Source of the DNA: Macrostomum lignano | Lineage: Eukaryota | Direction: 5' to 3' | DNA length: 64,000 nt | NCBI GenBank assembly: GCA_002269645.1 | Contig: NIVC01000061.1 | Span: 806,001-870,000, forward strand | Part shown: in pieces, positions 48,701 to 51,700 of the stretch | Layout: each line of letters opens with the position of its first letter | Position numbering within the stretch: the first letter of the stretch is position 1 | Translations under genes and position numbers: made by a program | The notes under the pieces: model-generated | Database searches by the model: none | Told to the model about the DNA's origin: nothing | Seen by the model: only the letters and a program-made list of their open reading frames with translations

Positions 48701-51700
48701 ATCTTCAGTCTTGAATAAATTTCTCAAGGCAAAAACGCTCACTTTGCTTCTATAAAGATCTAGATCTAGTTATTCTAGTATCTGTGGCGGCAGCAATAAA
48801 CTGATGCTTATATTGTCAAAAAACAAGCATTCCAACTGGCAATGTATTATTGAATGGTTTAGTTTATTTTATATTTTCCAGTGTCTTGTAAAATTATAAT
48901 TTGATTTTGACAATTGCGATAATATCAAATAGATATAATTATATCAGTTCAGTTTGTGTCTCAACAGATACAGAGACGAGTTTGACCAGAAACTGCTGGC
49001 TAAATCAATCGGCTTACAAAAGCTGGGACTAAATTCCTTTAAGCTAACAAAAATGAAAAAAAAAATATCTAAATATTATAAAAACAGATGCAGTGTTTTG
49101 AATGGCGGGCAGATTTTGAAAGTGAGAAGCAGTTTGATCTGTCTCATTAAGGCCAGGACCACCAGCAGTTGAAGGCGCTAAAAGTCCAACCCACTAAAAA
49201 GCTCGGCATTCCAGTTTTGTTGTTTGCGATTTGAAAAAAAAGCAAAACTTTTCCAAACCTTGGCTATTACGGATTCAGACGATTTGTTGTTTCAGACTAT
49301 GAGCACTGTGACTCTCACTGTGACAGCCTCTTCGCTACTGCTGTGAACAGCTTCAGGTATTTAATTGCCAATTTATGTTTTTTGAAATATTAAAACTGCA
49401 ATTGATTTGTGCCAACGACTGTGCTAAATATATATCAGCTCATTTTTTGCATTCCAACATTTTTAAAAGAGGTTGTTAAAAAGTGTAAGCCCGATGTTCC
49501 TGTTCTGTGTGAATAAAGCTTTCACAATTTCTGTGGAAATTGTTGACAGTTTTATTTCATTAAACAGCGCCAAAGTCTTTCAACTTTAGCAATTCTCTCA
49601 TTTTCAAACGTTTTTCTGGTATCAGTTTTTTTGCGTCTTGTATATTTTATGAATTATGATAGAAAATTTTCGGAGCAAAGCTGTCCTACTTCAGTAACAC
49701 AGTTTCCATCGATTCGTGTTCTTGTGTCTCTTTTTGTAACAATATTTTGTTTAACTACTGTTGCAACATTTTAACAAAAATAGTAAGTAAAACGCGTTTT
49801 TTCTATTGTACATGGACTACTGACAGAAGTAGTAGTATATTTTTGTATGCTTTTGTTATAACTCAGCTCTGAATTTAAGGAAAAGATTTTTTCCAGTAAA
49901 AAAACAAAACGTAAATTAACACACTTGAAATACTACTATTAGTAGGTGAATGAGTTCAAAACTTTGATTGAAATTTTTTTTAAATCAGTTAAAACTTTTT
50001 GAGTCTAATTCCTTGTCCCCACCCACTCCCCCTTTTCACAATTCTCCCCTCGCAATCCGGGATAATCAATAATCCTCAACCACAAAAACGCCCAACATAC
50101 GAACCGCGCTATTTTACCAAAACACGCACAAAAATCAAGGCGTGCTACCTCAAAGCCATCGAAACCTGTCCGACGTTTGCCGTCGCCTGGAGCAACCTGG
50201 GGTGCGTGTTCAACGCGCAGGGCGAGATCTGGTTGGCTATTCATCATTTTGAGAAGGTGAGCCGGCAGATATTCAGTTATTAGTGTTTAGTTTAGTAGTT
50301 ATTAGTTATATAGATTAGGCAGATATTCAGATAGCTATTAGGCAGATATTTGGCTAGCTATTAGGCAGATATTCAGATAGCTATTAGGCAGATATTTGGC
50401 TAGCTATTAGGCAGATATTCAGATAGCTATTAGGCAGATATTTGGCTAGCTATTAGGCAGATATTTGGCTAGCTATTAGGCAGATATTTGGCTAGCTATT
50501 AGGCAGATATTTGGCTAGCTATTAGGCAGATATTTGGCTAGCTATTAGGCAGATATTTGGCTAGCTATTAGGCAGATATTTGGCTAGCTATTAGGCAGAT
50601 ATTTGGCTAGCTATTAGGCAGATATTCGAGTAGCTATTCGGTAGACATTCGAGTAGCCATTGTCGAATAGCCGAGCCACATTCACTCCCTCAAACCTTCG
50701 CCCACACGAAAGGCCGTGTCGCTGGATCCGAACTTCCTGGACGCCTACATCAACCTTGGCAATGTGTTCAAAGAGGCTCGCATATTCGATCGAGCTGTGG
50801 CCGCTTATCACCGAGCTTTGCACCTGTCCAGCAATCACGCCGTAGTGCACGGCAACCTTGCCTCGGTGTACTACGAGCAGGGCCTGATCGACCTGGCCAT
50901 CGAGACCTACCGGCGGGCAATTAAAATCCAGCCAAATTTTCCCGACGCCTATTGCAATTTGGCCAACGCTCTGAAAGAGAAGGGCAGAGTTGGCGAGGCC
51001 GAGGAATGCTACAATACGGCCTTGAAACTGTGCCCGTCTCATGCCGACTCGCTCAACAATTTGGCTAACATTAAACGGGAACAGGTACGCGGCTTGTTAG
51101 ATAAATCTTGGAACAATTTATCGTCATTTTAGTGCCGTTTCCATGGTTCAGTGTACCATTTTGCCAATTGCCATTTCCATAGCTAAATGTGCCAGTTCCA
51201 TAGCTATAAGTGCCATTTTTCCATAGCTATAAGTGCCAATTCCATAGTTATAAGTGCCAATTCCATAGTTATAAGTGCCATTTTTCCATAGCTATAAGTG
51301 CCATTTTTCCATAGGTATAAGTGCTATTTTTTCATAGCTATGAGTGCCATTTTTCCATAGCTATAAATGCCATTTCCATAGTTATAAGTGCCATTTTCCC
51401 ATAGCTATGAGTGCCATTTCCATAGCTATAAGTGCCATTTTTCCATAGCTATGAGTGCCATTTTTCCATAGCTATAAGTGCCATTTCCATAGCTATAAGT
51501 GCCATTTCCATAGCTATAAGTGCCATTTCCATAGCTATAAGTGTCATTTCCATAGCTATAAGTGCCATTTCCATAGCTATAAGTGCCATTTCCATAGCTA
51601 TAAGTGCCATTTCCATAGCTATAAGTGCCATTTTTCCATAGCTATAAGTGCCATTTCCATAGCTATTCCGATGTAAGTGCCATTTCCATTCCATAAAAGC

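What the first reader, a model, noticed from the sequence alone, without database searches (positions are those of the whole stretch)
50004..50139. Distant branch point, about 134-nt AG-exclusion zone and weak AAG acceptor before OGT exon 4
Seen: no AG occurs between 50003 and the acceptor at 50138-50139. A CTAAT branch-like motif (50005-50009) is followed at once by a pyrimidine tract (about 50010-50053), then about 85 nt of A/C-rich spacer ending AAAAATCAAG|GCG. Known: long AG-exclusion zones mark distant branch points, which are typical of slowly spliced or regulated 3' splice sites. This supports regulated retention at this intron.
Basis: partly seen in the sequence, partly recalled or inferred. 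Interest (0 to 1): 0.7.

Follow-up and report, generated by a model that had tools for sequence, protein, structure and literature searches.

The report
Distant-branch-point splice site in flatworm OGT
The end of one long intron in the O-GlcNAc transferase gene of the flatworm Macrostomum lignano is built like a weak, slow splice site, and the same unusual design recurs at the matching intron in fish, snake, acorn worm, lamp shell and annelid; in vertebrates this is the intron used to self-regulate the enzyme.

Summary
The window is Macrostomum lignano contig NIVC01000061.1, and the gene is OGT. Positions 50004-50137 hold no AG. CTAAT (50005-50009) follows the upstream AG directly. It is followed by a 44-nt tract that is 84% pyrimidine, an 86-nt A/C-rich stretch (50054-50139; 45% pyrimidine) that ends in the acceptor, and an AAG acceptor before coding exon 4 (50140).

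The intron (46362-50139) is the positional ortholog of vertebrate OGT intron 4, the detained, O-GlcNAc-responsive intron. I mapped that intron in eight further lineages:
- It is the longest or second-longest intron of the gene in every lineage.
- Its AG-exclusion zone is 75 nt or more in 6 of 8, against 8% of the other OGT introns.
- A CTRAY motif starts within 12 nt of the zone's 5' edge in 4 of 8 (background 5%, p=4e-4).
- About 45% of roughly 80 de-replicated public ORFs that read through this acceptor end in AAG rather than CAG. The control is 12%.

A distant branch point with a deliberately weak acceptor is therefore the best reading, and probably an old bilaterian feature. It is not proven.
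- No lariat or RNA data could be reached.
- Closer branch candidates exist (TACGAAC at -37, TTTTAC at -24).
- Another intron of the same gene is entirely AG-free only because it holds a G-free minisatellite.
- Regulated retention in the flatworm remains an inference from orthology.

The parts
46293..46361 (+). OGT coding exon 3 ([23 protein letters not shown]), 69 nt
   Evidence: tblastn and exact chaining to PAA92170.1
46362..50139 (+). Intron 3, 3778 nt, phase 0. Donor GTAAGT, acceptor AAG. Positional ortholog of vertebrate OGT intron 4.
   Evidence: Same ...[11 protein letters not shown] junction in 8 other lineages
48238..48643 (+). 80-nt x 4.9 purine-rich tandem repeat in mid-intron. No function shown; copy number differs in the second gene copy.
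50002..50003 (+). Last AG before the acceptor; 5' boundary of the AG-exclusion zone
50005..50009 (+). CTAAT, candidate distant branch site (branch A at 50008, 132 nt before exon 4). Perfect match to CURAY/yUnAy.
   Evidence: Unchanged in the second gene copy. A CTRAY motif starts within 12 nt of the same edge in 4 of 8 other lineages.
50010..50053 (+). C-rich pyrimidine tract, 44 nt, 84% pyrimidine; presumed U2AF65 site
50054..50136 (+). A/C-rich, G-poor spacer without AG. No significant RNA structure.
50098..50104 (+). TACGAAC, rival proximal branch candidate (A at 50103, position -37). Matches 6 of 7 positions of TACTAAC but lacks the conserved U at -2.
50112..50117 (+). TTTTAC, rival proximal branch candidate (A at 50116, position -24). 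Reads TTTCAC in the second gene copy.
50137..50139 (+). AAG acceptor (suboptimal A at -3), first AG downstream of CTAAT
50140..50256 (+). OGT coding exon 4 ([13 protein letters not shown]...HHFEK), 117 nt

Best explanation
This is the 3' end of intron 3 of the Macrostomum lignano OGT gene. That intron is the positional ortholog of vertebrate OGT intron 4.

Proposed mechanism:
1. U2 snRNP pairs with CTAAT (branch A at 50008).
2. U2AF65 binds the adjacent 44-nt C-rich pyrimidine tract.
3. After the first catalytic step, the 3' splice site is taken as the first AG downstream. That is the AAG at 50137-50139, about 131 nt away, reached across an unstructured A/C-rich spacer from which AG is excluded.
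4. A far branch point, no pyrimidine tract next to the AG, and A at -3 together make an intrinsically weak or slow 3' splice site.

The same design recurs at this one intron in several animal phyla, so it is probably selected. Its likely role is to keep this intron rate-limiting, so that OGT output can be tuned by how efficiently the intron is removed, as in vertebrate intron detention.

Shown: the sequence anatomy, the reality of the acceptor, the orthology, and the cross-phylum recurrence. Inferred: which A is the branch point. More weakly inferred: that splicing of this intron is regulated or the intron retained in the flatworm.
For: - Anatomy and AG exclusion. The proximal pyrimidine tract is the weakest of the eight OGT introns examined.
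- The acceptor is supported by a unique exact chaining solution and by all annotated proteins.
- Orthologous intron, as length / acceptor / AG-free zone: fish 3218/AAG/134, snake 2858/AAG/78, Lingula 2501/CAG/194, Glandiceps 2546/AAG/121, Owenia 3627/TAG/101, Zootermopsis 7563/CAG/75, Mytilus 2274/TAG/51, Mesocestoides 420/TAG/19.
- Without M. lignano, the zone is 75 nt or more in 6 of 8 lineages against 8% of 126 other OGT introns (Mann-Whitney p=6e-4).
- CTRAY starts within 12 nt after the boundary AG in 5 of 9 lineages against a 5% background (p=3.5e-5). Without M. lignano it is 4 of 8 (p=4e-4), and with vertebrates merged 3 of 7 (p=4e-3).
- AAG is the acceptor in 4 of the first 8 lineages mapped against 8% of other introns.
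- Among about 80 de-replicated public ORFs reading through this acceptor, 35 have AAG and 42 CAG, against 10 and 71 in controls (Fisher p=3e-6). Two of them share M. lignano's exact exon-4 peptide and both have AAG.
- A roughly 70-nt block conserved between fish and snake ends exactly at the CTAAY.
- The last 150 bp of human intron 4 are 90-100% conserved in mammals although the mOGT reading frame is broken in most species (PMC4901358).
- Vertebrate intron 4 is detained in response to O-GlcNAc (PMC5588854).
Against: - No lariat, RNA-seq or retention data for M. lignano could be reached. A protein-database query with the intron-tail reading frame found nothing.
- Proximal branch candidates exist: TACGAAC at -37, TTTTAC at -24, CAATAAT at -68.
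- Much of the AG depletion follows from G-poverty. Given its own composition the stretch is AG-free in 1.6% of shuffles.
- Intron 7 shows that long AG-free zones arise trivially from minisatellites in this genome.
- The two M. lignano gene copies are too similar to show constraint: 2 differences in 136 nt, and 15.5% of windows score as low.
- No similarity to the vertebrate silencer region was found, and Drosophila is reported to lack it (PMC5588854).
- Mytilus and the cestode lack the design.
- Compared only with other introns of 2 kb or more, the excess in AG-free length is marginal (p=0.07, n=11).
- Nine lineages is a small, phylogenetically structured sample.
Confidence: 0.55

Rival explanations
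1. An ordinary constitutive 3' splice site with a proximal branch point (TACGAAC at -37 or TTTTAC at -24) and a short U-run as its pyrimidine tract. On this reading the long AG-free stretch is a by-product of a G-poor, C/A-rich low-complexity segment, and CTAAT is a coincidence.
For: TACGAAC matches 6 of 7 positions of TACTAAC at a canonical distance and is unchanged in the second gene copy. G makes up only 8% of the stretch. Long AG-free runs are frequent in this repeat-rich genome, including all of intron 7. In human data only one fifth to one half of zones of 100 nt or more are true distant branch points (PMC1431707).
Against: TACGAAC lacks the conserved U at -2, and the 23 nt before the AG are 35% pyrimidine. 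None of the 11 G residues follows an A (1.6% of shuffles). The stretch is not a repeat. The design recurs across phyla, with the branch motif at the zone's 5' edge.
Confidence: 0.27
2. The acceptor is specialised for a second use: it receives an alternative first exon, or the spliced leader, to make an N-terminally shortened OGT that starts at ACYLKAIE, like mOGT or sOGT. The unusual upstream region would serve that use rather than intron retention.
For: NCBI models predict isoforms of about 840-890 aa that lack the first ~170 residues in fish, Mytilus, ticks and hemipterans. The human mOGT start lies 150 bp upstream of this same boundary (PMC4901358). The M. lignano spliced leader ends in ATG (PMC8629364), and the acceptor is phase 0, so trans-splicing would give M-ACYLK... 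in frame. The frame is open for 49 codons upstream.
Against: The open frame contains no ATG. One in three acceptors would be in frame by chance. AAG does not fit the reported trans-splice motif [T/C]TNCAG (PMC8629364). All four M. lignano protein models are full length at the N-terminus. No data were available to test this.
Confidence: 0.08
3. The stretch is constrained because it encodes peptide, an mOGT-like N-terminal extension translated from intron-retaining RNA.
For: The in-frame reading frame is open for 49-50 codons in both M. lignano copies. Fish and a mammal-like contig encode an MLQxHF... extension ending in K before ACYLKAIE.
Against: Neither M. lignano copy has a start codon in the frame. 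One of the two differences between the copies changes an amino acid. With three TAA triplets in the stretch, one open frame is expected about 30% of the time (my calculation). The mOGT frame is broken in most mammals (PMC4901358).
Confidence: 0.03

Closest known systems
Distant-branch-point exons defined by long AG-exclusion zones (alpha-tropomyosin exon 3, PTBP1 exon 11, GABBR1 exon 23; Gooding et al. 2006, PMC1431707)
   Same: AG-free zone of 100 nt or more. A consensus branch motif at its 5' end, followed at once by a long pyrimidine tract. The acceptor is the first AG downstream. A spacer between the tract and the AG could hold regulatory elements.
   Different: The branch point is not mapped here. 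Known cases regulate cassette or mutually exclusive exons, often through PTB, and no alternative use of exon 4 is known. The tract here is C-rich rather than U-rich, and the organism is a flatworm.
Vertebrate OGT intron 4: the detained, O-GlcNAc-responsive intron with an intronic splicing silencer/decoy exon (PMC5588854, PMC12017769, PMC7373989)
   Same: Same intron position and phase (...EAK|ACYLKAIE...). Similar length (3.8 kb against 3.3 kb in human, 3.2 kb in fish). One of the longest introns of the gene. AAG acceptor and long AG-free zone shared with fish and snake.
   Different: No detectable similarity to the silencer/decoy region. Retention and O-GlcNAc responsiveness are untested in the flatworm. 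The 3' splice-site design was not discussed in the OGT papers I read.
Human mOGT N-terminal extension, encoded by the last 150 bp of intron 4 (PMC4901358)
   Same: The frame of the downstream exon stays open about 50 codons into the intron tail, and the last intronic triplet is AAG (K). A mammal-like contig reads ...LNPPK|ACYLKAIE.
   Different: The M. lignano frame has no ATG, so a protein product is unlikely.

Membership tests
Distant-branch-point 3' splice sites (AG-exclusion-zone class) | AG-exclusion zone of 100 nt or more directly upstream of a used acceptor | tested here: met
   134 nt, 50004-50137. The acceptor is fixed by exact protein chaining.
Distant-branch-point 3' splice sites (AG-exclusion-zone class) | Consensus branch motif near the 5' end of the zone, with an adjacent pyrimidine tract | tested here: met
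   CTAAT starts 1 nt after the boundary AG and is followed by 44 nt at 84% pyrimidine.
Distant-branch-point 3' splice sites (AG-exclusion-zone class) | No good branch site and pyrimidine tract close to the acceptor | tested here: inconclusive
   The proximal tract is very poor (30% pyrimidine in the last 20 nt), but TACGAAC (-37) and TTTTAC (-24) exist.
Distant-branch-point 3' splice sites (AG-exclusion-zone class) | Branch point mapped experimentally more than 40-50 nt from the acceptor | not testable with these tools
   No lariat or RNA data were accessible.
Distant-branch-point 3' splice sites (AG-exclusion-zone class) | Conservation of the arrangement in orthologs | tested here: met
   Zone of 75 nt or more in 6 of 8 other lineages. 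CTRAY at the zone's edge in 4 of 8, p=4e-4.
OGT detained-intron autoregulation (vertebrate intron 4) | Same intron position and phase in the gene | tested here: met
   ...EAK|ACYLKAIE, phase 0. It is the fourth intron in fish and snake and carries the block conserved between them.
OGT detained-intron autoregulation (vertebrate intron 4) | Conserved intronic splicing silencer/decoy exon | tested here: not met
   blastn with 7-nt words among the orthologous introns finds blocks shared by fish and snake only. Nothing matches the M. lignano, Lingula, Glandiceps or Mytilus introns; Owenia was not included in this comparison.
OGT detained-intron autoregulation (vertebrate intron 4) | Nuclear retention of the intron that responds to O-GlcNAc level | not testable with these tools
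   Needs RNA-seq or RT-PCR after OGT or OGA inhibition. The database query for read-through products found nothing.
Spliced-leader trans-splice acceptor of M. lignano | [T/C]TNCAG motif at the acceptor (PMC8629364) | tested here: not met
   The sequence is AATCAAG|G.
Spliced-leader trans-splice acceptor of M. lignano | Spliced-leader-containing reads ending at the site | not testable with these tools
   No read data.

The most novel reading that the evidence does not exclude
The weak acceptor with a distant branch point is an ancestral bilaterian feature of the OGT self-regulating intron. On this reading, tuning OGT output through slow or detained splicing of this one intron predates vertebrates and does not depend on the vertebrate-specific silencer/decoy exon. 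The flatworm, which can be made transgenic, would be a tractable invertebrate system to test this.
Probability: 0.3. Interest if true: 0.8.

Novelty: new member of a known kind. Interest (0 to 1): 0.55.

Why it matters
[quoted passage not shown] In vertebrates its level is buffered by regulated detention of intron 4. Work so far has centred on a mid-intron silencer/decoy exon conserved only as far as jawless fish, and Drosophila is reported to lack it (PMC5588854).

The comparison made here points to a second, much older part of the system. The 3' splice site of that same intron is kept weak, with a far branch point, a long AG-free zone and often an AAG acceptor, in flatworm, annelid, brachiopod, hemichordate and vertebrates.

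If this holds, it explains why the last 150 bp of the mammalian intron are conserved although they do not code (PMC4901358). It also predicts that the whole AG-free zone is sensitive to mutations that create an AG. Finally, it makes the origin of O-GlcNAc homeostasis by splicing testable in invertebrates.

Tried and rejected
- Rfam scan of the whole window: no RNA family.
- RNA folding of 50000-50150: no significant structure (z=-1.07), so no structure brings the branch site close to the AG.
- Repeat or transposon origin of the AG-free stretch: it has no other copy in the window or in the second gene copy's locus apart from its own ortholog, and it is not a tandem repeat.
- Constraint between the two M. 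lignano gene copies (about 95% identical): 2 differences in 136 nt, not significant.
- Cross-phylum similarity among the orthologous introns: only fish and snake share blocks.
- Protein-database query with the intron-tail reading frame, to find intron-retaining transcripts: no hit.
- mOGT-like coding reading: the frame is open but has no ATG.
- Spliced-leader RNA gene in the window: none.
- Literature search for the human mOGT N-terminal peptide: no paper. A mammal-like contig ORF confirmed ...PPK|ACYLKAIE instead.
- My first exon-mapping script was unreliable, so I replaced it with exact-match chaining.
- A genome-wide M. lignano distribution of AG-free zone lengths could not be built. Only the OGT gene and its second copy could be modelled.
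Full report
**What the window is.** A protein search with the spliced translation found near-identical Macrostomum lignano proteins. The next best hits, from other animals, were about 70% identical. Two cluster members (PAA92170.1 and PAA71829.1) led to two loci of assembly GCA_002269645.1.
- L001 (NIVC01000061.1) is identical to window 29766-64000.
- L002 (NIVC01001134.1) is a second gene copy, about 92-95% identical. This fits the duplicated genome of the sequenced DV1 line (PMC5730564).

**Gene model.** Exact-match chaining of each protein to its locus gave a single GT-AG solution per intron. 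The coding exons in window coordinates are:

| Exon | Coordinates |
|---|---|
| E1 | near 39766 |
| E2 | 44396-44790 |
| E3 | 46293-46361 |
| E4 | 50140-50256 |
| E5 | 50713-51084 |
| E6 | 51831-52292 |
| E7 | 52952-53410 |
| E8 | 53907-54317 |
| E9 | 54959-55313 |
| E10 | 55921-56476 |

The feature is therefore the 3' end of intron 3 (46362-50139, 3778 nt, phase 0, donor GTAAGT). All four M. lignano protein models contain ...[16 protein letters not shown]..., so the AAG acceptor is the one used by the annotation. That annotation was guided by transcript data (PMC5730564).

**Checking the observation.** The sequence is as described.
- There is no AG from 50004 to 50137 (134 nt).
- CTAAT lies at 50005-50009, one base after the upstream AG.
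- 50010-50053 is 84% pyrimidine.
- 50054-50139 is 44% A, 30% C and 10% G.
- The last 23 nt are 35% pyrimidine, and the acceptor is AAG.

The AG-free zones of the nine OGT introns are 68, 27, 134, 35, 30, 37, 489, 45 and 57 nt. The 489-nt case is intron 7, which is a G-free 27-nt minisatellite and so has no AG at all.

Of the 13 longer AG-free runs on this strand of the window, 10 are tandem repeats. The stretch studied here is not a repeat and has no second copy.

Chance estimates:
- 1.6% of shuffles with its own composition lack AG.
- The figure is 5e-5 under a Markov model of the intron body.
- The longest other AG-free run in the intron body is 80 nt.

The AG depletion is thus real. It is largely carried by G-poverty, and length alone is weak evidence in this repeat-rich genome.

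**Branch-site candidates.** I scored every A in the zone against TACTAAC and measured the pyrimidine content downstream.

| Candidate | Branch A | Distance to exon 4 | Match | Pyrimidine in next 25 nt |
|---|---|---|---|---|
| CTAAT | 50008 | -132 | perfect CURAY | 88% |
| TACGAAC | 50103 | -37 | 6 of 7, lacks the U at -2 | 56% |
| CAATAAT | 50072 | -68 | partial | 52% |
| TTTTAC | 50116 | -24 | yUnAy only | not scored |

The second gene copy keeps CTAAT and TACGAAC. It changes TTTTAC to TTTCAC and destroys a fifth candidate, TTCAC at -102. The region has no significant RNA structure. On sequence alone, the distal site is the only one with a real pyrimidine tract, but the proximal sites cannot be excluded.

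**Comparison with other animals, the decisive part.** I fetched OGT loci for a fish, a snake, a cestode, Lingula, the hemichordate Glandiceps, Mytilus, the termite Zootermopsis and the annelid Owenia. I mapped all introns by the same exact chaining. An intron at the identical position and phase (...EAK|ACYLKAIE or SCYLKAIE) exists in all of them.

In fish and snake it is the fourth intron. It contains a ~300-nt aligned block shared between them at 74% identity. This fits the silencer of the detained intron 4 described in human cells and said to be conserved to jawless fish (PMC5588854).

| Lineage | Intron length (nt) | Acceptor | AG-free zone (nt) | Rank of zone in gene |
|---|---|---|---|---|
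| M. lignano | 3778 | AAG | 134 | 2 of 9 |
| Fish | 3218 | AAG | 134 | 1 of 21 |
| Snake | 2858 | AAG | 78 | 2 of 21 |
| Lingula | 2501 | CAG | 194 | 1 of 20 |
| Glandiceps | 2546 | AAG | 121 | 2 of 20 |
| Owenia | 3627 | TAG | 101 | 2 of 15 |
| Zootermopsis | 7563 | CAG | 75 | 3 of 14 |
| Mytilus | 2274 | TAG | 51 | 6 of 19 |
| Mesocestoides | 420 | TAG | 19 | 4 of 4 |

The orthologous intron is the longest or second-longest intron of the gene in every lineage.

Statistics:
- With M. lignano left out, to avoid discovery bias, the orthologous intron's zones exceed those of 126 other OGT introns (Mann-Whitney p=6e-4). 75% against 8% are 75 nt or more.
- Against only the 11 other introns of 2 kb or more, the excess is marginal (p=0.07).

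**Position of the branch motif.** One search shows the following motifs, listed from the 5' edge of the AG-free zone:
- M. lignano, fish and Glandiceps have CTAAT at the 5' edge of the zone.
- Snake has CTAAC at the 5' edge.
- Lingula has CTGAC at the edge and a CTAAT 30 nt further in.
- Owenia has TACTAAT 23 nt into the zone.
- In each case except the Lingula CTGAC, a long pyrimidine tract follows at once. In Lingula the tract follows the CTAAT.

A CTRAY motif starts within 12 nt after the boundary AG in 5 of 9 lineages, against 5% for all other AGs in the same introns (p=3.5e-5). Without M. lignano the count is 4 of 8 (p=4e-4). With vertebrates merged it is 3 of 7 (p=4e-3). This is what a true distant branch point predicts: AG is tolerated up to the branch site and excluded after it.

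**The acceptor triplet.** AAG is the acceptor in 4 of the first 8 lineages mapped (M. lignano included, Owenia not yet added), against 10 of 120 other introns (p=0.003).

An independent and larger sample came by accident. It returned about 90 short ORFs called on public genomic contigs of many animals. These ORFs read through this same acceptor. The residue before ACYLKAIE reveals the triplet.
- After crude de-replication into 80 clusters, 35 have K (AAG) and 42 have Q (CAG).
- The control from other OGT introns is 10 AAG and 71 CAG (Fisher p=3e-6).
- TAG acceptors are invisible in this sample, and relatedness among the species is only roughly controlled.
- One mammal-like ORF reads ...MLQGHFWLVREKIM...LNPPK|ACYLKAIE.
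- Two Logan contigs share M. lignano's exact exon-4 peptide but have different intron tails. Both have K.

**Link to vertebrate biology.**
- The fish-snake alignment shows a conserved ~70-nt block that ends exactly at the CTAAY. In frame, it reads MLQxHF..., the start of the mOGT-specific extension.
- Trapannone et al. (PMC4901358) report that the human mOGT start lies 150 bp from this intron/exon boundary. They also report that these 150 bp are 90-100% identical across mammals, although the frame is broken in most species. That is non-coding constraint on just this region.
- The OGT papers I read concentrate on the mid-intron silencer/decoy exon. My term searches in them found no discussion of the 3' splice site of intron 4.

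**Interpretation.** The best reading is a 3' splice site with a distant branch point and a deliberately weak acceptor, at an intron whose vertebrate ortholog is the OGT self-regulating intron. I put about 0.6 on the distal branch point and about 0.35 on regulated retention in the flatworm.

Rivals:
- An ordinary proximal branch point, with the AG-free stretch as a compositional by-product (about 0.27).
- An acceptor specialised for an alternative first exon or spliced leader, giving a short isoform (about 0.08). NCBI models predict such isoforms in several phyla. The M. lignano spliced leader ends in ATG (PMC8629364), which would be in frame at this phase-0 acceptor.
- A coding extension (about 0.03). 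The frame is open for 49 codons but has no ATG.

**Limits.**
- There were no RNA or lariat data, and no genome-wide M. lignano intron set.
- The human DNA sequence itself was not available. The human AAG rests on my memory of the mOGT peptide, on a mammal-like ORF, and on the rule that the last intronic triplet must be NAG.
- Long AG-free zones in human data are linked to cassette-exon regulation rather than retention, and only one fifth to one half of zones of 100 nt or more are real distant branch points (PMC1431707).

Noticed in passing
window 44884-46257, 48238-48643, 50314-50649, 51169-51666, 52304-52846, 53423-53859, 54356-54889, 55424-55868: Introns 2 to 9 of the OGT gene each carry their own unrelated minisatellite (units of 20-80 nt, 5-34 copies). 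Copy numbers differ between the two gene copies and account for most of their intron length differences.
   Followed up: partly
window 53411-53906: Intron 7 (496 nt) contains no AG except its acceptor, because it is a G-free 27-nt minisatellite. Each unit carries a TCTAAT or TCTAAC branch-like motif. The same intron in the second gene copy (L002 26741-27047) is also AG-free.
   Followed up: partly
window 50710-50712: The next acceptor (intron 4, before exon 5) is also AAG, with an ordinary 35-nt AG-free zone. The snake ortholog also has AAG there; the other lineages do not.
   Followed up: partly
window 26869-33591: A 238-nt satellite in about 28 copies. It appears to lie inside a giant intron of an SLC7-like amino-acid permease gene (exon-like ORFs at 23709-24070, 35696-37192 and 37607-37852).
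   Followed up: partly
window 49993-50139: The reading frame of exon 4 stays open for 49 codons into the intron tail (50 in the second gene copy), without an ATG. This resembles the human mOGT extension encoded by the last 150 bp of intron 4.
   Followed up: yes
window 50017-50049, minus strand: Opposite the C-rich pyrimidine tract, the template strand has a G-quadruplex-type motif (GGGGAGAATTGTGAAAAGGGGGAGTGGGTGGGG). No function was tested.
   Followed up: no
loci L003, L004, L006, L007, L008, L010 (orthologous intron): The length of this one OGT intron stays within 2.3-3.8 kb from flatworm to vertebrates, with human reported at 3.3 kb. The termite (L009, 7.6 kb) and the cestode (L005, 0.4 kb) fall outside this range. 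Most other OGT introns in those genes are 0.1-1.4 kb.
   Followed up: partly
proteins P0302 and P0336 (Logan contigs, DNA not fetched): Two public contigs encode exon 4 with exactly M. lignano's peptide (ETCPTF) but different intron tails, both ending in K (AAG). They are probably related flatworms and would allow a close-range test of the AG-free zone.
   Followed up: no
protein P0123 (UniProt A0A1I8HME6) against window 54120-54300: One M. lignano OGT model lacks about 60 residues inside exon 8, the poly-Q linker region. This is either an alternative internal splice or an annotation artefact.
   Followed up: no
window 2157-2867 (-) and 8589-9365 (-): A reverse-transcriptase fragment (Pfam RVT_1), and an exon-like ORF with C1 and Rubicon-homology domains.
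   Followed up: partly
window 3321-3593, 4639-5112, 5636-5863, 10547-10738, 24074-24459, 35000-35189: Many long tetranucleotide microsatellites of related units (AGAC, TCTA, ACTA, ACTG, GTCT, TGTC). These cause most of the long AG-free or CT-free runs in the window.
   Followed up: no
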